Virus record (IMG/VR): IMGVR_UViG_3300025162_000016
Span: 304,759 to 368,758 of that record
Reading direction: 5' to 3' (one strand)
Length of the DNA stretch: 64,000 nucleotides
Shown: positions 2,325 through 56,102 of the stretch, piece after piece
Position numbering within the stretch: the first letter of the stretch is position 1
How the letters are laid out: the number at the start of each line of letters is the position of its first letter
The notes under the pieces: generated by a model
The model's input: only the letters and a program-made list of their open reading frames with translations
Databases searched by the model: none
What the model was told of the DNA's origin: nothing
Translations under genes and position numbers: made by a program

Positions 2325-2440
2325 AGTGAAGTGCTGGAACAGACCAGACACTATATCACTAAAAAATGAAACTTTGTAGTTGATAATTTTGAATAAACCG
2401 GTATAATTTATTTAGTGAAGTGCTGGAACAGACCAGACAC
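2325..2440 (+). repeat. Two solitary CRISPR-repeat variants (AGTGA...TCACT form)
   Basis: 2325-2360 AGTGAAGTGCTGGAACAGACCAGACACTATATCACT and a partial copy at 2414-2440. Confidence 0.9.
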
Positions 2441-2536
2441 AATAAGACGTAAGACGAAACAAGTAATCATTGACAAAATAAAAAATATCGGTATAGTTAG
2501 TAAAGTTAAGCGATTAAACAAATAAAACAATAAAAA

Positions 2537-2989
2537 ATGAAAAAACAAAATACGGAAGTAGTTGTTGTGACGGAAACGGAAACGGTAACGGCGACAGAAG
2601 TTAAGCGTGGGCGTGGGCGGCCCAGGTTTGAAATTAAGAAGCCGGAGACAAATACGTGGACAATGAATGATGTTAAGGCATTGAACCCTGATGTTTGTGC
2701 ATTGAGTTTATATCAGCATAAGAATAGGTGGATTGCGGAAAATTGGTGTGTGGATAGTGGGGAGCGAATTCCTACGGGCGGGGTGGGAAAGCCATTGACT
2801 GTGTTTATTGCGGTTGCGGCATTGCAACGGTCTAAGGCGGCAAAGAAGGCTGCAAAGACTCGTAAGATGAACAGCAAGCTTCCGGTGGCCCCTCCGGTGG
2901 ATATGGTTGCGGTTCCGGTGACTGATACGGTTGCGGTGACTGATGCGGTTCCGGTGACTGATGCGGTGGAGAATCTGGTGACGGTATAA
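2537..2989 (+). CDS. Putative DNA-binding protein (AT-hook RGRGRPR plus wHTH-like segment)
   Basis: AT-hook motif; segment similar to C-terminus of 5396-6046; VPVTDA repeats. Confidence 0.6.
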   Translation: MKKQNTEVVVVTETETVTATEVKRGRGRPRFEIKKPETNTWTMNDVKALNPDVCALSLYQHKNRWIAENWCVDSGERIPTGGVGKPLTVFIAVAALQRSKAAKKAAKTRKMNSKLPVAPPVDMVAVPVTDTVAVTDAVPVTDAVENLVTV

Positions 2990-3074
2990 TGGTTTACAAT
3001 AAAGACGGCGAGAAAAGTAAAATATTCTTTCCGTCTTTTCTTGACTTTTTATATTATATTCATACACTATACCC

Positions 3075-3884
3075 ATGAATAAAACAAAATTAAGTTTCAC
3101 TCACGGCAATGCAAAGTTATCAAAAGACACTGCAATTCTTTCCCTTCCGGCAGGATATACATGTCCTTTTGCGAACGAGTGCCGGTCTTGTTCGGATAAA
3201 GTTACCGGCAAGATTAAAGATGGTCCACATACGCAATTCCGTTGTTATGCCACAACGGCAGAGTGTTTATTTCCTAACATACGGAGAAGTCGGTGGAATA
3301 ATTTTGAGCTTATTAAAAACGCTAAAACAACAATCGGTATGGCAAATTTGATTGAACAATCTTTGGAAGGGAAGAAAAAAATCAAATTGGTTAGATTTCA
3401 TCAAAGCGGCGATTTCTTTTCGCAAGCATATTTCGATGCTTGGCTTATGGTTGCTCAAAATCATTCTAATCTAATTTTCTATGGTTATACTAAGGCATTG
3501 CCTTATTGGGTAAAGCGATTAGAGGCAATTCCTGCTAATTTTAGGATTGTAGCCTCAAGGGGTGGGACGCATGACAATTTGATTGAAATGTTTGGGTTGC
3601 GGTCGGTGCGGGTTGTGTTATCTGAGCGAGAGGCACGCCGGAAATGGAAGCTTCAAATTGACCATGATGATTCGCATGTCTGGAATTATGACAAGGACTT
3701 TGCCATTGTCATACATGGCATCCAACCGGCGGGAACAAAGGCTAGTAAAGCATGGCAGAAAATTAAAACGCATGGCAAAGGTGGATATAAAGCCAAATAT
3801 TTTGGTGACAAGAAAGTTAAAAAGCAGAATAGTGCAGAAGGCTGGAAAGTTAAACGAGTTTTTGCCGATAAAATAGCGGCATAA
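3075..3884 (+). CDS. Gp88-like phage protein
   Basis: GNAKL, SLPAGYTCP..C, CYA, RFHQSGDF, FYGYTK motifs. Confidence 0.8.
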   Translation: MNKTKLSFTHGNAKLSKDTAILSLPAGYTCPFANECRSCSDKVTGKIKDGPHTQFRCYATTAECLFPNIRRSRWNNFELIKNAKTTIGMANLIEQSLEGKKKIKLVRFHQSGDFFSQAYFDAWLMVAQNHSNLIFYGYTKALPYWVKRLEAIPANFRIVASRGGTHDNLIEMFGLRSVRVVLSEREARRKWKLQIDHDDSHVWNYDKDFAIVIHGIQPAGTKASKAWQKIKTHGKGGYKAKYFGDKKVKKQNSAEGWKVKRVFADKIAA

Positions 3885-3935
3885 AAAACACTAAATACCG
3901 TTGACTTTAATCAAGTTAACGGTATTCTTTTATTT

Positions 3936-4124
3936 ATGAGAACAATACTTGGTCCCGGTGCAAAGTGCCGGGGATATGTTAAAGAGACTGCTAATGGTAA
4001 GGAATTGCTTTCTTCTGGCGGTACCTTACTGGGATACTATAATGAAGATACTGATCAAACACTTGAGCCAGGGGGAAACTTGTATTCCTATGGTGATTGT
4101 CTTATCGAATTGCTTGAAGATTAA
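3936..4124 (+). CDS. Hypothetical protein
   Basis: ORF directly after TTGACT/TATTCT promoter. Confidence 0.6.
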   Translation: MRTILGPGAKCRGYVKETANGKELLSSGGTLLGYYNEDTDQTLEPGGNLYSYGDCLIELLED

Positions 4125-4134
4125 TGTTAACACT

Positions 4135-4452
4135 ATGAACATGAATAATAGAGTTACCCTACAGCGAACAATATTTACTAATTGGAACACCCAAAATCAG
4201 ACTTACGGATACCGTGCGTATGATGATCAAGGGCAAACGTACGGGAATTGTTTTTCTCTTTTGCAAATGAATTTGCCGGATGATCAATTCTTTAGATTGG
4301 TTTATTCGCAGTGTGATGAAATGGTGGCGGCAATGGTAGATTCCTGTTATGAGAATGCGCTTGGAATTGAAATTGATGGGGACGATAAATCGTATGAATG
4401 GGTGAAAGAAACACTTGCAAAAGAGACAGAAATCAGTAATATGACGGTATAA
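4135..4452 (+). CDS. Hypothetical protein
   Basis: ATG at 4135 in frame with track ORF 3949-4452; follows the previous gene. Confidence 0.6.
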   Translation: MNMNNRVTLQRTIFTNWNTQNQTYGYRAYDDQGQTYGNCFSLLQMNLPDDQFFRLVYSQCDEMVAAMVDSCYENALGIEIDGDDKSYEWVKETLAKETEISNMTV

Positions 4453-4465
4453 GAATAATAAAAAC

Positions 4466-4771
4466 ATGAAAATTACATTGAATCAAGCATATCGGTTATT
4501 GGAAGATTGTTCGGCGGTTATTTGGGCGGATTATTTTCTTACATTCCCAGCATTGCAAGATGAGGATAATGAGCCAAAAATGTTTTTGTCCTTAGACTCT
4601 ACGGATGAACACGGGAAAGTGTTTCTGGTGGAATTCTATCGACAAGATAATCAAGAAGTTAAAGCGATTGGGAATTCTTTATTTCTCACGGATACAACGG
4701 GTGAAGAAATTCAACTAACATTATTGCATGCAATGAACACGGAAATTTATTTGGATGGAAAACCGGATTAA
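4466..4771 (+). CDS. Hypothetical protein
   Basis: ORF in operon order. Confidence 0.6.
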   Translation: MKITLNQAYRLLEDCSAVIWADYFLTFPALQDEDNEPKMFLSLDSTDEHGKVFLVEFYRQDNQEVKAIGNSLFLTDTTGEEIQLTLLHAMNTEIYLDGKPD

Positions 4772-4851
4772 TTAAATCTATTAGTTTCCCGTCTATAACA
4801 GGGCGGGGAACTAAGTCTTGACAAAACAGAAATGTAGTATATTATCCTAAT

Positions 4852-5064
4852 ATGATTATTAACAAAATTACCTATGGGTTTGTAGTTCAACAATGGGATA
4901 CAGAAAAAAAACAATGGGTTGGACAAGACTTTGTTGCCGGGGACGTGGTTGAATTTGAAGATGAAACGGGGGATATGATTGATGATGCGGAAATGGAAGA
5001 AATCGAGAGCAAGCCAGCATTATCATTTAAAATGGTTCAACCAGAAAACGAAGCAAAGGCTTGA
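4852..5064 (+). CDS. Hypothetical acidic protein
   Basis: ORF after TTGACA promoter. Confidence 0.65.
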   Translation: MIINKITYGFVVQQWDTEKKQWVGQDFVAGDVVEFEDETGDMIDDAEMEEIESKPALSFKMVQPENEAKA

Positions 5065-5136
5065 CAATTCCAACTAAAGCAGTATAATTTAAGTCGGTGG
5101 TTGCATGTTCTGGAATATGTGCTATATATGATAGAC

Positions 5137-5356
5137 AGTGAAGTGCTGGAACAGACCAGTTACTATATCACTTTATGTTGTTATCTTTTTTAAATTTATC
5201 CCTTGTGAATAAATCTAAGGTTAGAGTTAAAATAACTTGCATGTTTCGGGGATAAGTGCTATATATGATAGACAGTGAAGTGCTGGAACAGACCAGTCAC
5301 TAAAACACTGGGAATATGTGCTACTGTATGCGATAATGAAGTGCTGGAACAAACCG
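5137..5356 (+). repeat. Cluster of three solitary CRISPR-repeat variants
   Basis: 5137-5172, 5274-5309 and degenerate 5335-5356; first two preceded by TTGCATGTT..GTGCTATATATGATAGAC. Confidence 0.9.
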
Positions 5357-5395
5357 ACATTGAAAATAGTTGACTTTTGATGGTGTATCGGTATA

Positions 5396-6046
5396 ATGAG
5401 CAAGATGAAACAAATTGAAGTTGAATTCAAAACTAATGCCAATGGCACCGGGATGCAATTTTTCCGGCAAATTAAAAAAGGTTTTACCCCTAAAGGTAAA
5501 GCTGTATACATATATGAACGTATTCATGCGATTGGAGATAAAGAAGGGGAAACATTTGGATTTGAAGTTATTGCGCCTTCGATAAAGAAGGCAGGAACGT
5601 ATTCGTTACCTGGTGGCAAATCAATTACGTATGCTGAGGATTTTGAGGAATATCCTGGGGCGTCTAAGTTTGGAATATCAGCCTGGTCGTATCCCGCTTA
5701 TCAAGCTGGCGGGGCACGATGGAAATTTGAACAGCTTACAAAAGAACTAATAGAAATTGAAGAAATCGAAGAAACTAATAATATGATTGAAAACGATAAT
5801 GTAGATACAAATGAAGTGCCGTCTAATGTTACTAAGTCGAGGGGACGGCCCAAGAATGATCGTCCGTTGCTAAGTATTCCGTCGGGGGAGTTTAGTACAA
5901 CGGAGCTATGTAAACTAAACAATACTGATTATTCTGTGGCGGCAGTGTTTTTGAGGGACTGTGAAGCGGCTGGGACGGTAAAGCGAACCCGTACCGAGAG
6001 GCGTAATGCTAAGGGGAAGGAAACTCAATTGTTTCAAGTTGTGTAA
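5396..6046 (+). CDS. Hypothetical protein with C-terminal AT-hook (RGRPK) and wHTH-like domain
   Basis: 216-aa ORF after TTGACT/TATAAT promoter. Confidence 0.65.
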   Translation: MSKMKQIEVEFKTNANGTGMQFFRQIKKGFTPKGKAVYIYERIHAIGDKEGETFGFEVIAPSIKKAGTYSLPGGKSITYAEDFEEYPGASKFGISAWSYPAYQAGGARWKFEQLTKELIEIEEIEETNNMIENDNVDTNEVPSNVTKSRGRPKNDRPLLSIPSGEFSTTELCKLNNTDYSVAAVFLRDCEAAGTVKRTRTERRNAKGKETQLFQVV

Positions 6047-6048
6047 AT

Positions 6049-6372
6049 ATGAAATCGAATAAGCCTATCCCTGAAACATATACGAACCGTGTAGCTCAAT
6101 TTAACAAGACTGAGCAACGATTGCCTAATGTTCCTGTTAAAGGCAAGGAGCCGGGTTCTACGCTCACGGATACGACCAAAGAAAACCCTTATATGATTGC
6201 TCGTCTTAAAGTTCTTAATGACTATAAAGAGGGTAGGCGTATTGAAGTGTTGGCAATGGAAAGAGATAATAGAATTGATCACCGGCATTATGAGGAATTC
6301 GTTACCGATGTTCTTAGGGTAGCCGGGGATATTCCTTCTCTGGCTATCCGAAATCGAATCAAAGGAATCTAA
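6049..6372 (+). CDS. Hypothetical protein
   Basis: Coupled to previous gene; terminator at 6395-6424. Confidence 0.6.
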   Translation: MKSNKPIPETYTNRVAQFNKTEQRLPNVPVKGKEPGSTLTDTTKENPYMIARLKVLNDYKEGRRIEVLAMERDNRIDHRHYEEFVTDVLRVAGDIPSLAIRNRIKGI

Positions 6373-6431
6373 TCTAATCTAATCTAATCTACAAATCCCC
6401 TGTCAAGTGACGGGGGATTTTTTATATATTT

Positions 6432-7020
6432 AGTGAATTACTGGAACAGACCAGTCACTATCAACTCTAAGATTAGAATTAAAACGAATTGCATTTTTTT
6501 GAAATTTCTAGTGAATTACTGGAACAGACCAGTCACTAAAACACTACCGGAGAAGGAGTAATAATTTTTTATCACCCTTCTCCGGCATATATGTAGTGAC
6601 GTGCTGGGATATATCAGTCACTAAAACACTCAGACTGTACGGTAAAGGTATCAGCACTTTCCCAACTAAAATGATCTACGATTGCTTTACCGGCAGCATC
6701 ATCTTGATCAAATGCCAATTTGGGTTCAAAATCCGCTTGTTCCGCTTTATTCATAGCAAATTTATAATGATACCCATTATCGTAATCATCTTCGGTACAG
6801 ATTAATTTACAAAAGTAAAAGTCTGGTTCTCCATTACTGTTAATCCCGGCTACCATCATCTTTAAGTCAAGCATAAAGTCAAGCATATTTTTGTTTTTAA
6901 TCGGTTAATTGTTTTTTTACTGTGATATGATTATACGGATTTACGGATAGGAGTCAACTAATAAATGTATATATTTAGTGACGTGCTGGAACAGACCAGT
7001 CTCTATATCTCTATATCACT
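6432..7020 (+). repeat. Four degenerate solitary CRISPR-repeat variants
   Basis: Starts at 6432, 6510, 6595, 6977 (AGTGAATTACTGGAACAGACCAGTCACT / AGTGACGTGCTGG forms). Confidence 0.85.
6614..6886 (-). CDS. Hypothetical acidic protein
   Basis: 90-aa ORF; minus-strand TTGACT/TATAAT promoter at ~6930-6958. Confidence 0.6.
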   Translation of the reverse strand: MLDFMLDLKMMVAGINSNGEPDFYFCKLICTEDDYDNGYHYKFAMNKAEQADFEPKLAFDQDDAAGKAIVDHFSWESADTFTVQSECFSD

Positions 7021-9377: not shown

Positions 9378-9440
9378 CTTCCCGGCAATAACTCATATAC
9401 TACTCATAGTTAATTAAACAAATAAAGCTAAACAAATATT

Positions 9441-10013
9441 ATGGGCTGGACATTTACAAATAAAGGTTCACAGACAACCAAAGAATTCTTCGAGCGAGCA
9501 TTCAACTATGACAAGCCGGACGAGGGCCGAAGCGGTAATATCATCCGGTTTTCTTCTACGTGGACAACCGCTTATATTGCGTATGAAGTTAAAATTCCGG
9601 CAACGGCGGAATCGCCAGCCAAAAGAGATGTTATCGCAATTGTATGTTTGCTTCGCCATGTTCCTAATGCTAAAGACGGCTACACTTTTGGCTATAAGGA
9701 CATGACGGAAAATATGGGGCCATACGAAAGCAAGTGCCCGAAAACAATTTTGAATTTGCTTACCCCAACAACGAGCGAGTATGCTATTAATTGGCGTAAG
9801 CGGTGCTGGGATAGAATTAACAGGAAAGCTAATGCGCCTAAAGTGAAAGCCGGTGACTTGGTTAAATTTACTGAAATTATTTCTTTCCAACATGGAATAA
9901 AAACGGATTTCCTGACATGGGTTAAAGGTAGTACCTTTCGATATGGGTATAGCCTATGTCGAATTCCCAATTGGAAAGAACGGGAATATATTAACCTTGG
10001 CGCAATTGTTTAG
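9441..10013 (+). CDS. DUF6927-like protein
   Basis: MGW start, GYKDMTENMGP..CP..IL..L..A..WR.RC motif. Confidence 0.7.
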   Translation: MGWTFTNKGSQTTKEFFERAFNYDKPDEGRSGNIIRFSSTWTTAYIAYEVKIPATAESPAKRDVIAIVCLLRHVPNAKDGYTFGYKDMTENMGPYESKCPKTILNLLTPTTSEYAINWRKRCWDRINRKANAPKVKAGDLVKFTEIISFQHGIKTDFLTWVKGSTFRYGYSLCRIPNWKEREYINLGAIV

Positions 10014-10047
10014 TGAAGTGCTGGAACAGACCAGTTACTATATCACT
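10012..10047 (+). repeat. Solitary CRISPR repeat (AGTGA...TCACT form)
   Basis: Full 36-mer overlapping the TAG stop of 9441-10013. Confidence 0.9.
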
Positions 10048-18039: not shown

Positions 18040-18525
18040 ATGAAACACAAGAGAAATTTTTGTAAATGTGGAAAAGAAAAAGACATGCGGTCAGAATGGT
18101 GTCGTGATTGTTTTCTCTCTCTTTATAAAAACGGAGAAATTGAAATATTGACCGAAAAAACAAAAGAAGTTATGAGGCATAAACAAAGACATTTACCTCC
18201 ATTTCGTTCCTTATATAATTTTCTTTTAAATTCTCAAAAACATAGAAAGAAAAATATTATTGTAGATTTAACTTTTGATGAATTTCTCGAATTAACAAAA
18301 ATTTCCAATTGTCATTATTGTGGAGAATTAGTTAAATGGGAACCATATCGAAAGGTAGGTGCCACCTGTGCTTATAATTTAGATAGGAAAAATAATAAAA
18401 TTGGTTATACAAAAGATAATTGTGTGGTTTGTTGTAAAGGATGTAATATGTTAAAATCTTATTATGATGATAACGAATTCCTTTCACGAATACAAAAAAT
18501 ATCCAAAAATCTAAAACTATGTTGA
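18040..18525 (+). CDS. HNH endonuclease
   Basis: CHYCG..LDRKNNKIGYTKDNCVVCCKGCNMLK. Confidence 0.85.
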   Translation: MKHKRNFCKCGKEKDMRSEWCRDCFLSLYKNGEIEILTEKTKEVMRHKQRHLPPFRSLYNFLLNSQKHRKKNIIVDLTFDEFLELTKISNCHYCGELVKWEPYRKVGATCAYNLDRKNNKIGYTKDNCVVCCKGCNMLKSYYDDNEFLSRIQKISKNLKLC

Positions 18526-19664
18526 GTTATACGACCACACTTTTAGGAGATTGTCAAGAACTGAAAAAGTTACTTGAATACGAAAGGTTTGTATTCAACC
18601 TTGCTTCCAAGGAACAACTCCCAGAAACAAAGAACTCTCTTGTAGTTCTTCACTCCAAAGTGTATAAAAATGTTCGTAAGTCAAATCCAGAAATCCCATC
18701 CCAAGTAGTAATCAAAGCAGAACAAGAAGTCCTTGCTTCCTATCGTTCTACGAAATCCAATAAACATAAGAAAACTCTCATTGTAAAAAAGAACCTCTCA
18801 ATGAGGTTGGATAAACGATTGTATTCCATTCCCAATAAGTTTTCAATTCGTATAACAGGAGCAACGGAAGGACGAAAAGAATACAAGTTTGTTGTCTATC
18901 CACGACTCAAAGAGTTGATGGAAAAGTATCCATTCCAAGACCCACTTATTTACGAACATAATGGAAAGATTTGTATTGCTTTCTCCTTTGAGAATAAAGT
19001 TGAAAAAGTGAAACAAAGATTGGCATTAGGTGTTGATATTGGCATTCGTAGGAGTGCTGCTTGTTCGGATGGACGACTTATCATTGACAAAAAATTCAAT
19101 GGTGAGAAAAGAGGATTACGACATCTCAAAGATGACTTGAAATCCAAAGGCAGTAAGAGTGCTCGTAAGAAACTTCGTTATTCGTTGCGAAGAAAAGAAC
19201 GCAATAGGAATAAGAACCAAACCCATTTGATTGCCAATGCGGTTCTCTGCACAGACGCAGACACGATTTGTCTTGAAAACCTCAAGAGCATAAAAAGAAA
19301 AAAGAACAAATACCAAAACAAAAGAAGTATATCACAAGTTCCAATGTTTGAACTTCGTAGAGTAATAACCTATAAGGCACAGAACCAAGGAAAGACGGTT
19401 CTGCTTGTTTGCCCTTCTTTCACATCACAACGGGACTCGGTAACGGGTAAAGTTGAAGGTGAAAGAAGAGGTTGTAGATTTTATTCTAAGAATGGAATGA
19501 TATACGACTCGGACATAAATGCTGCCATTAACATTGGCAAAATGTCCAAACATCCCGTATCACAGACACAAAATCTGACTTATGGGCAGGCGTCAGTCAA
19601 TACGCCAAATGAATATAAGTCCCCGCTCATCGGGGCCGTTCAAGCACCTATCCCTTTAGGGTAG
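18519..19664 (+). CDS. tnpB: TnpB RNA-guided nuclease (Zn-finger-less variant)
   Basis: RuvC motifs LGVDIG, ICLENL, DSDINAAINI; 3' end overlaps the right-end hairpin. Confidence 0.9.
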   Translation: MLSYTTTLLGDCQELKKLLEYERFVFNLASKEQLPETKNSLVVLHSKVYKNVRKSNPEIPSQVVIKAEQEVLASYRSTKSNKHKKTLIVKKNLSMRLDKRLYSIPNKFSIRITGATEGRKEYKFVVYPRLKELMEKYPFQDPLIYEHNGKICIAFSFENKVEKVKQRLALGVDIGIRRSAACSDGRLIIDKKFNGEKRGLRHLKDDLKSKGSKSARKKLRYSLRRKERNRNKNQTHLIANAVLCTDADTICLENLKSIKRKKNKYQNKRSISQVPMFELRRVITYKAQNQGKTVLLVCPSFTSQRDSVTGKVEGERRGCRFYSKNGMIYDSDINAAINIGKMSKHPVSQTQNLTYGQASVNTPNEYKSPLIGAVQAPIPLG

Positions 19665-20526: not shown

Positions 20527-20613
20527 GACCGTATATAAATTGACGCCTCCACGGGGCTACGGTTGGGTAATGCTAAGATCAATTGAGGAGACATGGATGT
20601 CTTCATGTACGAG

Positions 20614-21646: not shown

Positions 21647-21658
21647 TTGTTATCATTT

Positions 21659-23941
21659 ATGAGTAATATTACATTATCACTCATTTTAGAGCTTCTAAAT
21701 CATGATGCTATTCAAGCCGCATTAGCTAAAGCGGGAAAATCAAATTATTCTCGTAAAATTATTGATCTTGATCCAACTAAAGATAAAAATGCAGTTTATT
21801 CCATTAAGTTAACCAAGTTTTTCCTTGAACCTAGATCTGGTAACGACGATCAATTCTATGATATTCTCAAGTCTTATTTTGAAAAATTTCTCCTTTTTAA
21901 AAATAGAAAATTACTGAAAGGTAAAGACGCTGATCTCAATTCAATAAAATCTTTCAAAGATTTTCATAATTTAGTGGATGCAACCGAAGCAGAACTCAAA
22001 AGAAATAAACCGGCAGATATAGTAGCTAAAATTGCTGATCCAGAGAAAGTTGAAGATCAGGGAAATAGAATGGATGTATTAGGTAAGAAGATAGATAAGA
22101 AAGATATTACTTATATCGATCCGACGGTTGTTGTTATTCGGGCAGATAATTCATCGAAATCCAAGAGATATGGTGGTGGATTTAGTAACTGGTGTACGGC
22201 AAGAAAGACCGGAAATTTATTTTATGATTATCGATTTAAAGAGCCACCACAAACGATGTTTTACGTATATTTTTTAAATAAAGATAAGAATGATAATGAA
22301 TTAGTATTACATTTTGGAGTTGATGAAGATAGAGACATTTCTTATACCGACAGATTAAACAAAGAAAGTAGACAAACATTAGATTGGTTAGTGAAAAAGT
22401 TTCCAGAGTTGAAACCTGCATTAGATAAAAATGCATTTGAATTGGTTCCATTGACAGCAACTGAAATAAGAGTTAAAAAGTTACCAGATACGTTATCGGT
22501 GGAACAATTTAATGGATTAAGTTACGATGAGAAAGAGATGTGGTTTCAGTCTGGAGATAGAGAGGCTACATTAGAGGTATGGAATTTAATGGATGAGAAT
22601 TTCAAGAATTTGTATGTGAGAGAATTTTCAGATAGGGAGGATGATATTAACTATGCAGTATATGATACAATAAAAGGGACAAAGTATGAAAAGTTATATA
22701 TGGAAGGAATACAGGAGAGGATAGAAGATGGGATATCCGAGTCGGAGACACATACTATAGATCAATGTAGTCCACATGATTGGGAATTTATCAAGACCAG
22801 TCCGGGGTTGATTAATAAATTAAATTGTAGAGAAGGAATTTATTATACCTTATTTTATTCGCCGAATAAAAAAGAAACGGCCAGTCTACTTGGTGCTGCA
22901 AAGATAGATAGATTATCCGATTGGGAGGTGAAAGATTTGATAGATCGTTCTCAAAACAAAGAGGAAATGATTGAAATTATTTTACAATATAAAGGAAATA
23001 AATTAAGTGATGATAATGTTTATAATTTATTACAAAATTCATCAAATAAAGAGGAAATGATTAAATTTATTTTACAATATAAAGGAAAGAATTTAACCGA
23101 TTCCAATGTAAATGATATATTAACGCATTCTAAAAATAAAGAGGAAATGATTGAAATTATTTTAAAATATACCGGAAATAATTTAAGTGATAATAATGTA
23201 AATGATATATTAACGCATTCTAAAAATAAAGAGGAAATGATTAAAATTATTTTACAATATAAAGGAAATAATTTAACCGATTCCAATGTAAACGATATGT
23301 TAAAGCATTCTCAAAATAAAGAGGAGATGATTAAATTTATTTTAAACTATACCGGAAATCAATTAACCGATTCCAATGTAGAAAGTTTATTTTGGCATTC
23401 TAAAAATAAAAAGGAATTTATTAAAATTGTTTTACACTATAACGGAAATAATTTAACCAGTACGGCTATGAGATATTTGGTAGTGGCTTCTCAAAATAAA
23501 GAGGAGATGATTAAAATTATTTTAAAATATACCGGAAATAAATTAACCGATGAGAATGTAGATCAACTGATAGCGGCTTCATACGACGAGGACGGGTGTG
23601 TAGACGGGTATGTAGAAAATTTAGCCAAAATATTTGTGGCAAATAAGCATAAATTCAGTGAATCTCAAATTATGAATTTTTTGTATAGTAGCCGATACCC
23701 CCAAGAAATTGCTAGAATATTGGGTCAAAAAAATATAAACAAATTAAGTGAATCGAGCATTTTTTCCATATTGTCTACTTATGAACATAAAGAAACGTTT
23801 GCCAAACTTTTAATAACATATATATATCCCAATAGAATGACGCAGTTTAAGTTAAAATTTCCCGAATATAGGGAATTGTTGAACGTTCAAGCTGAGGATG
23901 AGGATGAATGGCATCCAAATTATAAATCTTATTTTAAATAA
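21659..23941 (+). CDS. Large protein with conserved N-domain (YGGG.SNWCTA) and ~30-aa helical tandem repeats; paralog of 49771-51870
   Basis: Repeats NKEEMIxxILxYxGNxLxDxNV; N-terminal ~400 aa nearly identical to the paralog. Confidence 0.85.
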   Translation: MSNITLSLILELLNHDAIQAALAKAGKSNYSRKIIDLDPTKDKNAVYSIKLTKFFLEPRSGNDDQFYDILKSYFEKFLLFKNRKLLKGKDADLNSIKSFKDFHNLVDATEAELKRNKPADIVAKIADPEKVEDQGNRMDVLGKKIDKKDITYIDPTVVVIRADNSSKSKRYGGGFSNWCTARKTGNLFYDYRFKEPPQTMFYVYFLNKDKNDNELVLHFGVDEDRDISYTDRLNKESRQTLDWLVKKFPELKPALDKNAFELVPLTATEIRVKKLPDTLSVEQFNGLSYDEKEMWFQSGDREATLEVWNLMDENFKNLYVREFSDREDDINYAVYDTIKGTKYEKLYMEGIQERIEDGISESETHTIDQCSPHDWEFIKTSPGLINKLNCREGIYYTLFYSPNKKETASLLGAAKIDRLSDWEVKDLIDRSQNKEEMIEIILQYKGNKLSDDNVYNLLQNSSNKEEMIKFILQYKGKNLTDSNVNDILTHSKNKEEMIEIILKYTGNNLSDNNVNDILTHSKNKEEMIKIILQYKGNNLTDSNVNDMLKHSQNKEEMIKFILNYTGNQLTDSNVESLFWHSKNKKEFIKIVLHYNGNNLTSTAMRYLVVASQNKEEMIKIILKYTGNKLTDENVDQLIAASYDEDGCVDGYVENLAKIFVANKHKFSESQIMNFLYSSRYPQEIARILGQKNINKLSESSIFSILSTYEHKETFAKLLITYIYPNRMTQFKLKFPEYRELLNVQAEDEDEWHPNYKSYFK

Positions 23942-23966: not shown

Positions 23967-25294
23967 AATTTTTGGAGGAAGGAAACCCCGACGGCTTTAG
24001 CCTCGGGGAGGAATTCCGACCATTCTTAACATTCTACACCAACCACCTCAATTTGTCAACCACAAAAATATTTTAACTTTTTCGATGTTTTTGATATTTT
24101 CATCACTATGTATTGTGTAGTAATGATAACATATAATACCAAACTGAAATTTGAGAAACAAGAAGATTTCAATAATCTCCTTGAATCTCTCAAATTAAAT
24201 CAATCGGCTTGGAATATCATAAGTCAAGAAAGATTTTCTATGACCGGTGGAATATTGAAAATTCTTCACGACAAATGTTATTATAAAGTTAAAAAAGCCC
24301 TGCCAACTATTCCATCGCAGTTTATCATTAAAGCGGAACAAGATGTCATTGCTACTTACAAAACAATTAAATCCAATAAACATAAACTTGATTCTCCCGC
24401 TACAAAAAAGAATTTATCCATTCAATTAGATAAAAGAATCTACAAGTGGATAGACAAAACACACTTAAAAATCACCACATTAAATAAACAAGCAATTGTG
24501 TCGTTTGATGTATATGAAAAGTTAAATGAATTAGATTTTTCCAAATTAAAAGACCCCAAATTATTTTTCAAAAATGGGAATTTCTATCTAAGTTTGATTT
24601 TCGATATTCAGCTTCCGTTTATTGATAATAATAAAATCGTAGGAATTGATGTAGGATTAAAAAGATTAATTTCCACGAGTGAAGGAAATATTGTTAAAGG
24701 CAATGAATTCAATGGGCATAAACGTAAAATTCGTTGGAATAAAAGAAAATTTCAATCTAAAAAGCACTCACATTCAGCGAGAACAAATCGTAAGAAACTC
24801 AGAAAAAAAGAAGCAAATTTTAGTAGAAATTATATACATAATGTTACTAAAAATGTAATTCTAAATACCAATGCAAATATTTTAGTGATAGAAGATTTAA
24901 GTAAAATTAAAAGTAAAAATAAAGGTAAACGATTCAATAATAGATTAAGTCAATTACCATTTTTCGCATTCAGAACTATATTAACATACAAGGCACAACT
25001 TTACGGAAAAAAAGTTGCAACAGTTAACCCCGCCTTTACAAGCCAAATAGATCATAGAGGTTTAGTTGGTGGAAAAAGAAGGGGATGTAGATATTATGGT
25101 TCGGACAATGTAGTATTAGATGCGGATGTAAATGCCGCAATCAATATTGCTAACAGATATGTAGACAATTTGAGTTTACATAAACACTCCGTTTTGTGTT
25201 GCAAAGCACTGGATGGACAGGCTGCGGTCAATCAGCCAATCGTCGGAAGTTCTTTCCGGCAAGCCCCTATCCCTTTAGGGTAGGGGTTGTTGAC
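23967..25294 (+). mobile_element. IS605/IS1341-type element (tnpB only)
   Basis: Left hairpin CCCCGA..TCGGGG, right hairpin CCCCTATCCCTTTAGGGTAGGGG-TTGTTGAC; TTCAT precedes the left end. Confidence 0.8.
24108..25283 (+). CDS. tnpB: TnpB RNA-guided nuclease (Zn-finger-less variant)
   Basis: VGIDVG, VIEDL, DADVNAAINI. Confidence 0.9.
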   Translation: MYCVVMITYNTKLKFEKQEDFNNLLESLKLNQSAWNIISQERFSMTGGILKILHDKCYYKVKKALPTIPSQFIIKAEQDVIATYKTIKSNKHKLDSPATKKNLSIQLDKRIYKWIDKTHLKITTLNKQAIVSFDVYEKLNELDFSKLKDPKLFFKNGNFYLSLIFDIQLPFIDNNKIVGIDVGLKRLISTSEGNIVKGNEFNGHKRKIRWNKRKFQSKKHSHSARTNRKKLRKKEANFSRNYIHNVTKNVILNTNANILVIEDLSKIKSKNKGKRFNNRLSQLPFFAFRTILTYKAQLYGKKVATVNPAFTSQIDHRGLVGGKRRGCRYYGSDNVVLDADVNAAINIANRYVDNLSLHKHSVLCCKALDGQAAVNQPIVGSSFRQAPIPLG

Positions 25295-25567: not shown

Positions 25568-25731
25568 CCAGTTCTAATAAAATAAACAGTTGTGCGTTGA
25601 TGAATAGAAATATTCCAGCACGGAGCTTATAGTCCCGAGTGTTTTGAAAACCTAAATTTAGTAAGAATAAATTTTAATAGAACAGGTAACTATATGGTGA
25701 AGTGCTGGAACAGACCAGTTACTATATCACC
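25568..25731 (+). ncRNA. Putative scaffold RNA copy A (internally shortened) fused to one CRISPR repeat (25696-25731)
   Basis: TTGACA/TATAGT promoter at 25536-25563; sequence shared with the 45.6, 56.8 and 63.7 kb copies. Confidence 0.6.
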
Positions 25732-26594: not shown

Positions 26595-26814
26595 ATTTTT
26601 GGATGTCTGATATGGATATGAGACTTTTATGTTAATTTGCGAGCGGTTAGGTGGTGTCAAATATGCCGTAGCCGCTCGCAACTTGTAACTCACTGATAAT
26701 GTGGAACTTACGAAATATGATATTTGATGTTGACAAATCGAGGATAATAGAATACACTACCGCTCGCAAATTGATACACAGTTCTTTGACAATACGATAG
26801 TTGCGAGAGACACA
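26595..26814 (+). promoter_or_regulatory. CRISPR leader 1
   Basis: TTGCGAGCGG..CCGCTCGCAA motifs, TTGACA/TAGAAT promoter; near-identical to leader 2. Confidence 0.85.
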
Positions 26815-27352
26815 GGTGAAGTGCTGGAACAGACCAGTTACTATATCACCGGTTGAACTCTGTCATATCTATGTCCACGTTAATCAGGTGAAGTGCTGGA
26901 ACAGACCAGTTACTATATCACCGATCTCTTCCGATGTTTGCTCAAGAGAAGCTTGTTTGGGTGAAGTGCTGGAACAGACCAGTTACTATATCACCTAGGG
27001 TTGCTATAAATGTAACAACCAAACTAGCAGATGGTGAAGTGCTGGAACAGACCAGTTACTATATCACCCAGTACTGGAGTACGGTTAAACCGGACACTAT
27101 ACCCGAGGTGAAGTGCTGGAACAGACCAGTTACTATATCACCAATAAACACTGTTCATCCGTTTCCGTTTCCGGTTTCGTTTGAAGGGTGAAGGTGAAGT
27201 GCTGGAACAGACCAGTTACTATATCACCCGAAAATGGAATATCTCTGCTATAGTTATGTTTGTAAGGTGAAGTGCTGGAACAGACCAGTTACTATAACAC
27301 CATCCTTGGACCAACCATCCAACCATCCAAACAGACCAGTTACTATATCACC
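26815..27352 (+). CRISPR. CRISPR array 1: 7 full repeats plus 1 partial
   Basis: Repeats start at 26815, 26887, 26960, 27033, 27107, 27193, 27266; spacers 36-38 nt (one 50 nt); degenerate distal end. Confidence 0.97.
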
Positions 27353-28057
27353 CTATATCATCCTAAGAAAAGTTATAAATCTTGGAGATATATTTGAAAG
27401 GGTATATATTCCATCTTTAAATAAAGGGTCATCAAACAATCTCAGTTGTGGATTATCTTCCATGGCGGCATTAATATCTATTTTATAAAGAGAAAATTCT
27501 TTGAGTGTATTATTTAATTCAAAAAATCTATTTGCAATTAATTCTGCTTCGTCTTCCGTTCTAGTGAAATATATTCTTTCGGGATGATAACTTATTTTAC
27601 TTAAACTTTTTGGGACCAATCCTATTTTTCGTATTTTATTATCATTGATGGAAGGGGTTGCATGATATAAAACCGAAAATTCCATATCAGTTAATTCCGG
27701 ATCAAATTTTGCTTCGGCTTGAATTGCTATTAATATGTTTAACAATGGGCTATTATTTTTGAAATCATTTTTATCAAATTTTTTCCATTTCATATTTTCT
27801 TTGTTTAATAAACCGGCGGAAATGTACCATCCTAAATTATTAATTAATTTCAATAAGTTATCCAGTTCTTTTTCGGAAGGCGGTTTAATAAAAGAAATGG
27901 TAATAATGTTTCCATTTTTAGGAACTATTTTTATTTTTTCAGTCGAAATTGCCCATCGATTAATCATATCATTGAATTTTGTTTTTGAAACCGAATAGAT
28001 TAATCCTTCGTATAATAAATGATCTCGGATTAGGTGGTTTAGCTTAATCATCTGCAT
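27353..28057 (-). CDS. Putative ADP-ribosyltransferase-fold (Tpt1/KptA-like) protein
   Basis: LYHATP..N...I.KIGLVPK...RIYFT...LYKID...YT..NISP. Confidence 0.6.
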   Translation of the reverse strand: MQMIKLNHLIRDHLLYEGLIYSVSKTKFNDMINRWAISTEKIKIVPKNGNIITISFIKPPSEKELDNLLKLINNLGWYISAGLLNKENMKWKKFDKNDFKNNSPLLNILIAIQAEAKFDPELTDMEFSVLYHATPSINDNKIRKIGLVPKSLSKISYHPERIYFTRTEDEAELIANRFFELNNTLKEFSLYKIDINAAMEDNPQLRLFDDPLFKDGIYTLSNISPRFITFLRMI

Positions 28058-28090
28058 ATATATATATGCCGGTTAAAATAAAACGTCTAC

Positions 28091-28305
28091 AATTTTTGGA
28101 TGTCTGATATGAGACTTTTATGTTAATTTGCGAGCGGTTAGGTGGTGTCAAATATACCGTAGCCGCTCGCAACTTGTAACTCACTGATAATGTGGAACTT
28201 ACGAAATATGATATTTGATGTTGACAAACCGGGGATAATAGAATACACTACCGCTCGCAAATTGATACATAGTTCTTTGATAATACGTTACTTACGAGGG
28301 ATACA
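28091..28305 (+). promoter_or_regulatory. CRISPR leader 2
   Basis: Duplicate of leader 1. Confidence 0.85.
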
Positions 28306-29152
28306 GGTGAAGTGCTGGAACAGACCAGTTACTATATCACCCAATGATCCAACCGCAAACTTTATAAACTGTTGTGTTGGGTGAAGTGCTGGAACAGACC
28401 AGTTACTATATCACCAATATTACTACGTCGTATTTATATATCGAATGATAATGTTGGTGAAGTGCTGGAACAGACCAGTTACTATATCACCCAAGTCTAT
28501 CCATGCAACCTAATACATATCGTTGTGAGGTGAAGTGCTGGAACAGACCAGTTACTATATCACCGGAGAGAGATAAACCTCTACATGGTATGGTTCGGCC
28601 AGTGTGGTGAAGTGCTGGAACAGACCAGTTACTATATCACCTTCCCATATTCTTCGGAGTTACTCGAATTATCCGAGGTGAAGTGCTGGAACAGACCAGT
28701 TACTATATCACCTGTATGTGGTAACTTTTGTTCCTATAGCATCAACAAGGTGAAGTGCTGGAACAGACCAGTTACTATATCACCGTCAACAGTTGACATA
28801 CCTTGAATTCCCGGCGCTGTTGGTGAAGTGCTGGAACAGACCAGTTACTATATCACCTAATGATCCAACCGCAAACTTTATAAACTGTTGTGTTGGGTGA
28901 AGTGCTGGAACAGACCAGTTACTATATCACCAATATTACTACGTCGTATTTATATATCGAATGATAATGTTGGTGAAGTGCTGGAACAGACCAGTTACTA
29001 TATCACCTAGCATACTGGTATGATAGGATCTAAGAAGTAATCTTGGTGAAGTGCTGGAACAGACCAGTTACTATATCACCGACCATCGAGGGGATAACCG
29101 ACACGATTGACCTTACGGCGAATTACTGGAACAGACCAGTCACTATATCGCC
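28306..29152 (+). CRISPR. CRISPR array 2: 12 repeats, 11 spacers
   Basis: 36-bp repeats, 35-41-nt spacers; terminal variant GGCGAATTACTGGAACAGACCAGTCACTATATCGCC. Confidence 0.98.
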
Positions 29153-45654: not shown

Positions 45655-45817
45655 TAAACATAGGTTAATTGACTAACAAAAAGATGAGAATAGAAATATT
45701 CCAGCACGGAGCTTATAGTCCCGAGTGTTTTAAAAACCTAAATTTAGTAAGAATAAATTTCAATAGAACAGGTAACTATATGGTGAAGTGCTGGAACAGA
45801 CCAGTTACTATATCACC
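45640..45817 (+). ncRNA. Putative scaffold RNA copy B (5'-truncated) fused to one CRISPR repeat (45782-45817)
   Basis: Near-identical to 63859-64000, followed by an exact 36-bp repeat. Confidence 0.6.
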
Positions 45818-48096: not shown

Positions 48097-48246
48097 ATGA
48101 AAACACCTATATATACAAAAATTGCACAGCGAAACTGGATGGAAAAGCGAAAGAAAGCGGGATATTGCTGGGCTACTTTCTTTACCACCAAGGAGAACGT
48201 AGCTAAATTAAAGGAGTTCTACGCTGAACTCAAAAAGTCCAAATGA
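48097..48246 (+). CDS. Small basic TnpB-associated protein (49 aa, not in track)
   Basis: MKTPIYTKIAQRNWMEKRKKAG...KLKEFYAEL; ATGA overlap with 48243. Confidence 0.65.
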   Translation: MKTPIYTKIAQRNWMEKRKKAGYCWATFFTTKENVAKLKEFYAELKKSK

Positions 48247-49493
48247 TCCGCTCATCAAACCATACAACAAAATTTGCAAATCCTCTCAAACTAAAGAGGT
48301 TGTCCAGATTCGTTGACGAATACAGGCGAGTTGGCCAAATCATTATCGATACTATCTGGGCCAACGGTTATGACAGCTTTATTCCATTAAAGGATCAACT
48401 TAATTGCCCAAAATACCTTGACTACAATCGGTTTGACGTGGAAACAGACATTTCCCCAAGAGCAATGAGTTCGCTCACAACCCAAATATGTGCTGCCCTA
48501 TCAGCATCCACAAAAAAACGAAAGAAACTTCTATATACAAAATCCAAACTAATAGATGAAAATATACCAACAAAATCTATCGATAGACTGTTGACAAAAT
48601 ACATAATCGTAAAACCAGACTGCCGTTACATGAATCCAGAACTTAGTTCCAAATGTAGCGACATCGAATCTGGAAAATCCTTCGACTACTTTCTACGAAT
48701 AAAATGTATCGGTAAATCTTATGGTCACATAAAAATTCCACTAAAACATACCAAAATGAGCCTAAAATGGCTCAAATCAGGAAAACCACTCACATCATAT
48801 TCTTTAACTACATCTTCTATTACACTGAGGTTTGAAATTAAACCTTTACGCACAACCATTGGAACAAAGGTTATTGGTGTTGATCAAGGGATGAAAGACG
48901 TTGCTACTTGTTCTGATTCCCAAACAACCCCCAAAACCGATGCTCATGGACACTCGCTTGAATTTATAATAAACAAACTGTCAAGAAAAAAGAGGGGTAG
49001 CAGAGCATTTGAAAAAACACAGTCTCACAGAAAAAATTTTATTAATTGGTCAATCAATCAATTAAATTTTAATGATGCCAAAGAAATTCGATTGGAAAAA
49101 ATATGGAACATTGGCTACAAAAATCGAACGTCAAGAAAGCTTTCACATTGGACAAACACGTTGATTAGAGATAAAATTATTGGAAAATGCGAAGAACTGG
49201 AGGTTCCAGTCATCGAGCAGGATTCCACTTATCGTTCCCAACGTTGTTTTAATTGCGGATTGGTACGAAAAGCCAATCGGAAAGGTAAATTATACAAATG
49301 TAAGAAATGTGGGTATGAGGCGGATGCTGATTTCAATGCAAGCCTAAACCATAGTATTGATTTGCCTGATATCGATTGGCGGTTTCGTGGTAAAGGACAC
49401 AATCTAGGCAAGGGGTTCCGATGGACTCCTACCGGATTGTTCAACCTTGACGGATCGGAGCTTAGAGTCCCGGTTTCCAACAAACAAGGATAA
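48243..49493 (+). CDS. tnpB: TnpB/Cas12f-like RuvC nuclease
   Basis: IGVDQG, IRLEKI, SQRCFNCG..CKKCG, DADFNASLN. Confidence 0.85.
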   Translation: MIRSSNHTTKFANPLKLKRLSRFVDEYRRVGQIIIDTIWANGYDSFIPLKDQLNCPKYLDYNRFDVETDISPRAMSSLTTQICAALSASTKKRKKLLYTKSKLIDENIPTKSIDRLLTKYIIVKPDCRYMNPELSSKCSDIESGKSFDYFLRIKCIGKSYGHIKIPLKHTKMSLKWLKSGKPLTSYSLTTSSITLRFEIKPLRTTIGTKVIGVDQGMKDVATCSDSQTTPKTDAHGHSLEFIINKLSRKKRGSRAFEKTQSHRKNFINWSINQLNFNDAKEIRLEKIWNIGYKNRTSRKLSHWTNTLIRDKIIGKCEELEVPVIEQDSTYRSQRCFNCGLVRKANRKGKLYKCKKCGYEADADFNASLNHSIDLPDIDWRFRGKGHNLGKGFRWTPTGLFNLDGSELRVPVSNKQG

Positions 49494-55969: not shown

Positions 55970-56102
55970 AATTATTAATAACGGTGACTAGTTCACCTCA
56001 TGCTTGGTAATTTAAAAAAAAAATAGCGAATTGATAAATCGCAAATGCTGGCTCTAATCCAGTCCAAGTATATTTTAATTTTTTTCTGATATAGTTAGCC
56101 CT

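What the first reader, a model, noticed from the sequence alone, without database searches (positions are those of the whole stretch)
26595..29152. Twin leader-bearing CRISPR arrays with no cas genes in the window
Seen: a duplicated ~215-bp leader with identical repeats but no shared spacers, so each array acquired spacers separately. The 36-nt repeat has complementary ends plus an inner stem. I could not assign a subtype, and no cas1/2/6/7/9/13 is recognisable in 64 kb. Established: huge phages carry arrays that use host Cas or compact type V effectors against competing elements.
Basis: partly seen in the sequence, partly recalled or inferred. Interest (0 to 1): 0.65.

Follow-up and report, generated by a model that had tools for sequence, protein, structure and literature searches.

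The report
Phage CRISPR arrays serving Cas12–Cas3
The two repeat arrays are real CRISPR arrays of a 369-kb lake phage, and they most likely feed a rare phage-encoded Cas12 nuclease paired with a Cas3 helicase-nuclease that lies just outside the window, while extra single copies of the same repeat sit in front of many other phage genes.

Summary
Array A (26815-27301, plus a truncated repeat at 27330-27352) and array B (28306-29152) share a 36-nt repeat and a roughly 210-bp leader.

The "no cas genes" reading reflects where the window starts. The window is the last 64 kb of a 368,758-bp phage record. A 1003-aa Cas12 with an intact RuvC triad ends 830 bp before window base 1. It sits divergent to a type I-C-like Cas3, which is followed by a third array with the same repeat and leader. 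A fourth array lies at 9.1 kb.

Cas1, Cas2, Cas5 and Cas7 are absent from the genome. In all ten contexts examined, counting this phage (Cas12 profile E ≤ 3e-22), Cas3 is adjacent. The repeats co-vary, and a leader motif (a TTGCGAG…CTCGCAA palindrome plus a CTCGCAAA box and promoter abutting repeat 1) is conserved.

The closest solved relatives are Cas12X and Cas12o1, which use 36-nt-repeat crRNAs without a tracrRNA. A Cas12–Cas3 hybrid was noted in 2023 with shorter Cas12 proteins described as Cas12m, which is not known to cleave DNA.

Two things are new here. About 16 solitary repeats lie in intergenic DNA, several directly behind promoters. The genome also carries 15 intact TnpB-like genes, three of them in the window. 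No protospacer was found, so the targets and the PAM remain unknown.

The parts
26595..26814 (+). Leader of array A. It holds the palindrome TTGCGAGCGG…CCGCTCGCAA, a TTGACA-N17-TACACT promoter-like site, a third CCGCTCGCAAA box, and a proximal TTGATA-N16-TACGAT site that ends 16 nt before repeat 1.
   Evidence: The same leader (91-92% identical) precedes all four arrays of the genome. The motif architecture recurs in distant Cas12+Cas3 loci.
26815..27352 (+). CRISPR array A: 7 repeats, 6 spacers (36-38 nt, one of 50 nt), and a truncated 3' repeat fragment at 27330-27352.
27353..28057 (-). 234-aa ORF between the arrays, on the opposite strand. Function unknown.
   Evidence: No Pfam, NCBIfam, PHROG or PADLOC match. 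The Atlas gives only sub-threshold leads to ADP-ribosyltransferases.
28088..28305 (+). Leader of array B, a duplicate of leader A.
28306..29152 (+). CRISPR array B: 11 perfect repeats plus a degenerate terminal repeat (29117-29152, with a compensatory C3-G34 pair) and 11 spacers. Spacers 1-2 are duplicated as spacers 8-9.
25696..25731 (+). Solitary perfect repeat, 413 nt downstream of the TnpB-like ORF. It is preceded by a ~94-nt stretch of a dispersed element that is also found before the repeat at 45782 and at the terminal-repeat edges.
45782..45817 (+). Solitary perfect repeat behind the same dispersed promoter-like/5'-leader element.
2325..7012 (+). Cluster of solitary or paired repeat variants (AGTGA…TCACT ends, pairing kept) at 2325, 2414, 5137, 5274, 6510 and 6977. 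Several sit behind sigma-70-like promoters.
10012..10047 (+). Solitary repeat variant between the stop codon of ORF 9441-10013 and a hairpin followed by a T-run.
24108..25283 (+). TnpB/Cas12f-like ORF (391 aa). The RuvC D/E/D residues are present; the CxxC zinc ribbon is absent. It is probably not the effector of the arrays.
   Evidence: NF040570 1e-39; PF07282; alignment to ISDra2 TnpB. TnpB-like genes are not conserved next to arrays in related loci.
18519..19664 (+). TnpB-like ORF (381 aa).
48243..49493 (+). TnpB-like ORF (416 aa).

Best explanation
The twin arrays are two of four dispersed crRNA-producing arrays of a phage-encoded, adaptation-less type V system. Its effector module, a 1003-aa Cas12 with an intact RuvC site and a type I-C-like Cas3 helicase-nuclease, lies immediately upstream of the window.

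Proposed working:
- Each array is transcribed from a promoter in its conserved leader that abuts repeat 1 (inferred).
- The transcript is cut into units of one full 36-nt repeat hairpin plus a 34-41-nt spacer, as in the structurally closest enzyme Cas12o1. No tracrRNA is needed (inferred by analogy).
- Cas12-crRNA finds matching DNA of competing phages or other elements in the same host (inferred).
- Cas12 cuts with RuvC and/or hands the R-loop to Cas3 for processive degradation (inferred).

Shown here: the arrays, leaders and repeat structure; the presence and conserved pairing of cas12 and cas3; the intact catalytic residues; and the absence of Cas1, Cas2, Cas5 and Cas7.

The solitary repeats are most simply single-guide or regulatory derivatives, or collapsed remnants, of the same system.
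For: - The window is bases 304759-368758 of a 368,758-bp virus record. The same repeat forms arrays at 9141-9612(-), 297365-298344(-), 331573-332059(+) and 333064-333910(+). All four have the same leader.
- Cas3 (298524-300800): TIGR01587 1e-29, PADLOC Cas3c 1e-88, PDB 8zns/8g9u.
- Cas12 (300917-303928): the RuvC motifs GIDLG, AMENL and HADVNA are present. D550 and E796 are invariant, and D873 is kept in at least 90% of 24 homologues.
- The AlphaFold model has mean pLDDT 82. Its best PDB matches are Cas12X 8zqh (E 3.5e-26, TM 0.60/0.65) and Cas12o1 8xca.
- Cas3 is adjacent to the Cas12 homologue in all ten contexts examined, counting this phage.
- Related loci L009 and L010 carry arrays next to cas3 with homologous 36-nt repeats whose stems co-vary.
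- The leader palindrome and CTCGCAA box are conserved in L016, L017, L018 and L026.
- No Cas1, Cas2, Cas5 or Cas7 is found in the genome.
- The repeat family is absent from bacterial and archaeal genomes.
- Cas12o1 uses a 36-nt repeat crRNA (PMC13717751).
- Unique flanks of the locus are 100% identical in lake metagenomes from two studies, 2017 and 2020.
Against: - No RNA data exist. No RNA run holds the locus, so transcription, processing and crRNA orientation are inferred.
- No protospacer was found. GenBank phages gave no hit to either array, two spacer cores gave no foreign hit in IMG/VR, and there are no self-matches. Targets and PAM are therefore unknown.
- No physical Cas12-Cas3 interaction was tested.
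- With an intact RuvC site, Cas12 may not need Cas3.
- The source of spacers without Cas1-Cas2 is unexplained.
Confidence: 0.78

Rival explanations
1. The arrays borrow host Cas proteins, as orphan arrays that mimic a host CRISPR system.
For: The window has no canonical cas gene. The phage lacks Cas1 and Cas2, so some host contribution to adaptation cannot be excluded.
Against: A degenerate pattern covering the repeat family found only two lone matches, probably chance, across one genome each of 185,579 species. The phage encodes its own Cas12 and Cas3 next to an array with the same repeat and leader. Repeat and effector co-vary across related contigs.
Confidence: 0.04
2. One of the compact TnpB/Cas12f-like proteins in the window, for example the 391-aa ORF at 24108-25283, is the effector that uses the arrays. 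This would be a hypercompact type V system.
For: Three such ORFs lie in the window, and the nearest is 1.5 kb upstream of array A. Its RuvC triad is intact. A solitary repeat lies 413 nt downstream of it.
Against: The genome holds 15 intact TnpB-like ORFs scattered through it, most of them far from any repeat. In related contigs the arrays travel with Cas12+Cas3, not with TnpB-like genes. The sequence between this ORF and the solitary repeat is a dispersed element that also occurs without any TnpB.
Confidence: 0.05
3. The arrays and solitary repeats are decaying relics. Without an adaptation module the arrays only shrink or duplicate, and single repeats are collapsed arrays whose leader promoters now read into neighbouring genes. 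They have no present function.
For: There is no Cas1 or Cas2. Arrays show internal duplications and truncated ends. Two solitary repeats (genome 229885, 282075) keep the promoter half of the array leader. L008 has a leader plus one repeat where L009 has an array.
Against: 39 of 41 array repeats are identical, and four leaders are 91-96% identical with their motifs intact. The effector genes are intact with conserved catalytic residues. Diverged solitary copies keep the fold through compensatory changes. The flanks of the locus are unchanged in samples three years apart.
Confidence: 0.1
4. Cas12 acts alone on the arrays, and the neighbouring Cas3 has an unrelated job, such as degrading host DNA.
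For: The RuvC triad is intact, so Cas12 could cleave on its own. The characterised relatives Cas12o1 and Cas12X edit DNA as single proteins. The one Cas12X-like contig examined shows no Cas3 in its 1.3 kb of upstream sequence.
Against: Cas3 is the immediate neighbour in all ten contexts examined, counting this phage, down to about 20% Cas12 identity and in both divergent and co-directional layouts. In this phage, L009 and L010 the array sits directly downstream of cas3.
Confidence: 0.2

Closest known systems
Cas12-Cas3 'class 1-2 hybrid' loci (Altae-Tran et al. 2023, Science; PMC10910872)
   Same: A Cas12 gene sits next to a type I-C-like Cas3 and a CRISPR array, with no Cascade. Our Cas3 best matches the PADLOC Cas3c model. 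The paper reports that Cas12 co-purifies with a processed crRNA.
   Different: The paper's Cas12 genes encode 684-742 aa and are described as Cas12m, which is not known to cleave DNA. This lineage is 864-1007 aa, has a conserved D-E-D triad, and is structurally nearest to Cas12X and Cas12o. None of the paper's listed contigs is one of ours. The sequences could not be compared directly.
Cas12o1 / Cas12X (PDB 8xca, 8wru, 8zqh)
   Same: They are the best sequence and fold matches (profile E 8e-11 over RuvC; Foldseek E 3.5e-26, TM 0.60/0.65). Cas12o1 is guided by a crRNA made of a 36-nt repeat plus spacer, and the structures contain crRNA only.
   Different: Identity is only about 14%. Ours is longer and always next to Cas3. 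The one Cas12X-like contig examined shows no Cas3 in its 1.3 kb of upstream sequence. The PAM here is unknown; for Cas12o1 it is ATG.
CasPhi (Cas12j) and Cas-lambda systems of huge phages
   Same: These are phage-encoded type V effectors with arrays and no Cas1/Cas2, thought to target competing elements (own knowledge; PMC7162821 was listed).
   Different: They are weak fold matches (TM 0.17-0.23). Those effectors are about 700-800 aa and act alone. To my knowledge no Cas3 partner, no four dispersed leader-bearing arrays and no genome-wide solitary repeats are described for them.
Stand-alone repeats and mini-arrays giving cr-like regulatory RNAs (Shmakov et al. 2023; bioRxiv 10.1101/2023.03.03.530964), and RNA anti-CRISPRs (Racr)
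   Same: Single repeats and two-repeat mini-arrays lie near cas genes. In L010 a mini-array sits in the cas12 5' leader, and its spacer partly matches cas12 itself. In this phage the sequence after the repeat downstream of cas12 matches a promoter-like site 130 nt upstream.
   Different: Here the copies are spread over more than 300 kb of a phage genome, in front of unrelated genes. The matches spare the repeat-proximal end of the guide, where Cas12 seeds normally lie. Racr copies mimic a host repeat, and no host with this repeat was found.

Membership tests
CRISPR array | At least three near-identical direct repeats of 23-55 nt, regularly spaced by unique spacers of similar length | tested here: met
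   7 and 12 repeats of 36 nt; spacers mostly 35-41 nt, all unique apart from one internal duplication.
CRISPR array | An AT-rich leader with a promoter on one side and repeat decay at the far end | tested here: met
   A conserved ~210-bp leader with promoter-like sites. The terminal repeats are degenerate or truncated.
Type V CRISPR-Cas | A single large effector with a C-terminal tripartite RuvC-like domain and a Cas12 fold | tested here: met
   D550/E796/D873 motifs. The model (pLDDT 82) matches Cas12X, Cas12o1, Cas12h and Cas12b over its full length.
Type V CRISPR-Cas | The effector gene lies next to an array with the same repeat | tested here: met
   cas12 is divergent from cas3, which is followed by array 297365-298344. 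A repeat fragment and a solitary repeat lie just downstream of cas12.
Type V CRISPR-Cas | An adaptation module (Cas1, Cas2, with or without Cas4) | tested here: not met
   No Cas1 or Cas2 match in the complete record. This is usual for phage-borne systems and is not required for interference.
Type V CRISPR-Cas | crRNA bound by the effector and guide-dependent cleavage next to a PAM | not testable with these tools
   No RNA runs hold the locus and no protospacers were found.
Cas12-Cas3 hybrid (Altae-Tran 2023) | Cas12 adjacent to a type I-C-like Cas3, without Cascade genes | tested here: met
   Cas3c 1e-88. No Cas5 or Cas7. Adjacency holds in all ten contexts examined, counting this phage.
Cas12-Cas3 hybrid (Altae-Tran 2023) | The Cas12 partner is a short (~700 aa) Cas12m-type protein, not known to cleave DNA | tested here: not met
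   864-1007 aa with a conserved catalytic triad. No Cas12m structure is among the 50 best fold matches. The paper's gene lengths are 684-742 aa.
Type I CRISPR-Cas | Cascade subunits (Cas5, Cas7, Cas8) together with Cas3 | tested here: not met
   No Cas5 or Cas7 in the genome. The ORFs between cas3's array and thyX have no Cas family match.
RNA anti-CRISPR (Racr) / host-mimicking solitary repeat units | The repeat is identical or near-identical to a host CRISPR repeat | tested here: not met
   Only two lone matches, probably chance, in 185,579 species genomes.
cr-like autoregulatory RNA | A stand-alone repeat or mini-array near a cas gene whose spacer partly matches a cas promoter or gene | tested here: inconclusive
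   The L010 mini-array spacer matches cas12 codons in 30 of 37 positions, with the 3' 20 nt perfect. The guide after the repeat at genome 304154 matches a promoter-like site in 25 of 26 positions. In both cases the repeat-proximal bases mismatch.
IS200/IS605 TnpB (the window's TnpB-like ORFs) | A RuvC triad, a zinc-ribbon TNB domain, and an omega RNA at the 3' end with transposon ends | tested here: inconclusive
   NF040570 1e-39 and the triad is present, but the CxxC pairs are lost in ORF 24108-25283. No omega RNA or transposon ends were identified, and Rfam finds none.

The most novel reading that the evidence does not exclude
The phage uses its CRISPR repeat as a general cis element. About 16 solitary repeats lie in intergenic DNA, several directly behind their own promoters. 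They would make transcripts begin with a complete 36-nt Cas12 handle followed by the 5' leader of a phage gene. The Cas12(-Cas3) module would then defend against rivals and also bind or process the phage's own transcripts. That could time their expression, or arm single guides against relatives that lack the repeat at that locus. The conserved CTCGCAA-box palindrome in the leaders would be the switch that couples array and gene expression.
Probability: 0.2. Interest if true: 0.85.

Novelty: new variant of a known kind. Interest (0 to 1): 0.62.

Why it matters
A nuclease-competent Cas12 that is always linked to a Cas3 shredder would be a second, independent class 1/class 2 hybrid. It raises a testable question: does a single-protein effector recruit Cas3 the way Cascade does?

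The system is small (two genes and a 36-nt repeat), so it could be a route to programmable long-range deletions.

The four dispersed arrays with a conserved, motif-rich leader, and the many promoter-linked solitary repeats in a phage that owns the matching effector, offer a natural case for asking whether CRISPR repeats are reused for gene regulation in viruses.

For the scan itself, the case shows that "orphan arrays" near a window edge need a check of the whole genome.

Tried and rejected
- Large ORFs near the arrays: the 764-aa ORF (21647-23941) and the 699-aa ORF (49771-51870) looked like candidate compact Cas12s. They are paralogues (62% identical) with C-terminal ~30-aa tandem repeats and no Cas or PDB match, so they were rejected.
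- Spacer targets: both arrays searched against GenBank phages (blastn, E ≤ 1) gave no match. Two 24-nt spacer cores in IMG/VR found only the phage itself. There were no hits to the related loci fetched and no self-targets.
- Relatives of the phage: the exact repeat in IMG/VR returned only fragments of the same genome. Pattern scans with the Cas12 alignment in IMG/VR, JGI metagenomes and GTDB genomes added nothing beyond L009.
- Expression and strain variation: no RNA run holds the locus. Logan contigs break at every repeat, so spacer content in other samples could not be read.
- Rfam: no CRISPR-DR, tracrRNA or omega RNA family hit; only a tmRNA and a tRNA.
- tracrRNA: no clear anti-repeat was seen by eye in the leaders. 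This was not searched exhaustively.
- Omega-RNA idea: the conserved ~140-nt element upstream of the solitary repeats at 25696 and 45782 was considered as a TnpB omega RNA. It also occurs without any TnpB and not after the other paralogues, so this was rejected.
- Genes behind solitary repeats: Pfam gives only DUFs or nothing.
- Cas12-Cas3 complex prediction: not sent. The two proteins together (1761 aa) exceed the size limit, and there was no basis for choosing domains.
Full report
**Observation.** The 36-nt repeat GGTGAAGTGCTGGAACAGACCAGTTACTATATCACC occurs 22 times in the window at up to 3 mismatches, against none expected by chance.
- Array A has seven repeats and six spacers at 26815-27301, followed after 28 nt by a 23-nt 3' fragment of the repeat at 27330-27352.
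- Array B has eleven perfect repeats from 28306, a degenerate twelfth at 29117-29152, and eleven spacers.
- The sequences upstream are duplicates: 26615-26850 and 28106-28341 are 96% identical over 236 nt.
- Spacers are 34-41 nt, with one of 50 nt. None is shared between arrays, but array B repeats its first two spacers as spacers 8-9.

On 14 variants from this phage and from two related contigs, 85% of cells pair and eight of 13 pairs change on both sides. No shuffle out of 500 reaches the observed covariation score, and slid registers collapse. The structure is therefore selected, not accidental.

**Where the window lies.** It is the last 64 kb of a 368,758-bp virus record with 7,102-bp identical ends.

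The same repeat forms two further arrays, at 9141-9612(-) and 297365-298344(-). It also occurs about 16 times singly or in loose pairs, always on the + strand.

All four arrays have the same leader, 91-92% identical to leader A.

**cas genes.**
- Directly upstream of the 297-kb array lies a 758-aa Cas3 with HD and helicase parts: TIGR01587 1e-29, PADLOC Cas3c 1e-88, PDB 8zns and 8g9u.
- Divergent from it is a 1003-aa ORF (300917-303928) that ends 830 bp before the window begins. It carries RuvC motifs (GIDLG, AMENL, HADVNA) and matches Cas12o1/Cas12X in that region.
- In an alignment of 24 homologues, D550 and E796 are invariant and D873 is nearly so.
- An AlphaFold model (mean pLDDT 82) matches Cas12X 8zqh (E 3.5e-26, TM 0.60/0.65), Cas12-2/Cas12o1, Cas12h and Cas12b over its full length.
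- Cas1, Cas2, Cas5 and Cas7 profiles find nothing in the complete record, while the controls respond.

**Is the pairing real?** The word-based search found only three other clusters at 55-58% identity. The exhaustive profile search found 122 clusters, ten of them at E ≤ 1e-30.

I looked up nine further contexts, with profile E-values from 0 to 3e-22. With this phage that makes ten, and in all ten a Cas3 gene is the immediate neighbour, either divergent or co-directional. One of them is a 168-kb phage contig that also carries rIIB, EF-Ts and Thg1.

A Cas12X-like member at the far edge of the family shows no Cas3 in its 1.3 kb of upstream sequence.

Where DNA beyond cas3 or cas12 was available, arrays or mini-arrays follow. 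L009 and L010 have 36-nt repeats homologous to ours, with compensatory stem changes.

The leader is also conserved. L016, L017, L018 and L026 show a palindrome of the form TTGCGAGYR…YRCTCGCAA, then a CTCGCAAA box about 15 nt upstream of a TTGATA-N16/17-TAnnnT promoter-like site. That site ends 0-16 nt before repeat 1. This phage has the same layout.

A box sequence kept across effectors that share only about 20% identity points to sequence-specific recognition by some factor. I could not identify the factor.

**How it most likely works.** The arrays are guide stores for the phage's own Cas12.

The closest characterised enzyme, Cas12o1, uses a crRNA made of the whole 36-nt repeat plus at least 18 nt of spacer, with no tracrRNA in the solved complexes. 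That fits a repeat whose two ends pair, and a promoter that starts transcription at repeat 1. These steps are inferred; no RNA run holds the locus.

Cas12 has what it needs to cut. The invariant neighbour Cas3 suggests that the R-loop is also handed to a processive helicase-nuclease, as in type I systems. That step is inferred from synteny alone.

Targets are unknown. No spacer matched GenBank phages, IMG/VR (two cores tried), the related loci or the phage itself.

Use of host Cas is unlikely. A degenerate pattern covering the repeat family hit only two isolated sites among 185,579 species genomes.

The TnpB-like ORFs in the window are unlikely effectors. The genome has 15 intact TnpB-like ORFs scattered through it, and they do not travel with arrays in related contigs.

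**Comparison with what is known.** Altae-Tran et al. (2023) listed a "Cas12-Cas3" class 1-2 hybrid. It has seven loci, a Cas12 described as Cas12m (not known to cleave DNA), a type I-C-like Cas3, and crRNA co-purification.

Our Cas3 is also I-C-like. But the Cas12 genes in that cluster encode 684-742 aa, whereas this lineage is 864-1007 aa, keeps the catalytic triad, and is closest in fold to Cas12X/Cas12o. None of the paper's contigs is ours.

I could not align the two sets, so "same family" versus "sister lineage" stays open. On either reading, the kind of system is already known from bioinformatics and its mechanism is not. I therefore class this as a new variant of a known kind.

**Beyond the finding: the solitary repeats.**
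- Two (genome 229885 and 282075) keep the promoter half of the array leader plus one repeat, and a start codon follows 40 and 18 nt later.
- Two in the window (25696 and 45782) sit at the end of a ~140-nt dispersed promoter-like/5'-leader element that also marks the edges of the terminal repeat.
- A cluster at window 2325-7012 and 10012 has AGTGA…TCACT ends, a double change that keeps the pairing.
- Six of the 16 have a sigma-70-like site scoring at least 10 of 12 within 110 nt upstream, against 3.5% of random positions. In two of them the -10 box ends 6 nt before the repeat, so the RNA would start with the repeat.
- One (window 10012) lies between a stop codon and a terminator-like hairpin, so not all of them are in 5' leaders.
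- Next to cas12 there is a possible regulatory loop. The 26 nt that follow the repeat at genome 304154 match, in 25 of 26 positions, a promoter-like site 130 nt upstream that has a TTTT 5' flank. In L010, a two-repeat mini-array in the cas12 leader carries a spacer that matches cas12 codons in 30 of 37 positions, with a TTT 5' flank.
- In both cases the repeat-proximal bases mismatch. That is the wrong end for a Cas12 seed, so this remains unexplained.

Stand-alone repeats and mini-arrays near cas genes, including cas12a, are known. A genome-wide set in a phage that owns the matching effector is, to my knowledge, not described.

The simplest rival is that they are collapsed arrays. The phage has no adaptation genes, arrays show duplications and truncations, and L008 has a leader plus one repeat where L009 has an array.

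**Limits.** All functional steps are inferred from sequence, structure prediction and synteny. Logan contigs from four lake metagenome runs (two studies, 2017 and 2020) cover the unique flanks at 100% identity but break at every repeat. They show persistence of the phage, not spacer turnover.

Noticed in passing
window 2325-2360, 2414-2449, 5137-5172, 5274-5309, 6510-6545, 6977-7012, 10012-10047, 25696-25731, 45782-45817 (more copies upstream in the genome): Solitary or loosely paired copies of the CRISPR repeat lie in intergenic DNA, all on the + strand. Several sit behind sigma-70-like promoters. A local variant has compensatory AGTGA…TCACT ends.
   Followed up: partly
window 18519-19664, 24108-25283, 48243-49493 (12 more elsewhere in the genome): The 369-kb phage carries fifteen intact TnpB-like ORFs. 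The one nearest the arrays keeps the RuvC triad but has lost the CxxC zinc ribbon. No TnpA, transposon ends or omega RNA were identified.
   Followed up: partly
window 21647-23941 and 49771-51870: Two paralogous proteins (764 and 699 aa, 62% identical) have a conserved N-terminal half and C-terminal tandem ~30-aa repeats. Each lies beside a TnpB-like gene. No family or structure match was found.
   Followed up: partly
window 45640-45781 and 25602-25695; also 63859-63999 and 56768-56909(-): A ~140-nt dispersed element (a promoter-like site plus a 5' leader) ends exactly where flanks diverge. Copies sit at both edges of the 7,102-bp terminal repeat, which suggests the contig ends were set by this repeat.
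   Followed up: partly
L010:5028-5137 and 5400-5436; L001:14024-14049 and 14190-14220: Guides next to cas12 partly match cas12 itself (L010) or a promoter-like site downstream of cas12 (this phage). Both have a T-rich 5' flank, and both have mismatches at the repeat-proximal end.
   Followed up: partly
window 26640-26685, 26766-26776 and the same places in leader B; L016:6742-6790; L017:12758-12806; L018:5244-5290; L026:~3990-4035: A palindrome TTGCGAGYR…YRCTCGCAA and a further CTCGCAAA box are conserved in leaders across very divergent Cas12+Cas3 loci. They are a candidate operator or RNA switch.
   Followed up: partly
window 27353-28057 (-): An unknown 234-aa ORF lies between the two arrays. 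It has only sub-threshold language-model leads to ADP-ribosyltransferases. L016 has a weak ART-PolyVal ORF upstream of its cas3.
   Followed up: partly
window 20136-20529 and 56001-56071: A phage-encoded tmRNA (Rfam 93.8 bits) and a tRNA are found by Rfam but missed by ARAGORN.
   Followed up: no
window 57639-59357: A papain-like cysteine protease is interrupted by an intein that contains an HNH endonuclease. It lies inside the terminal repeat.
   Followed up: no
window 27330-27352; L001:13943-13966: Two truncated repeats both begin at the loop (AACAGA… and AACATA…) and keep only the 3' 23 nt. One ends array A and one follows the cas12 stop codon. The shared break point is unexplained.
   Followed up: no
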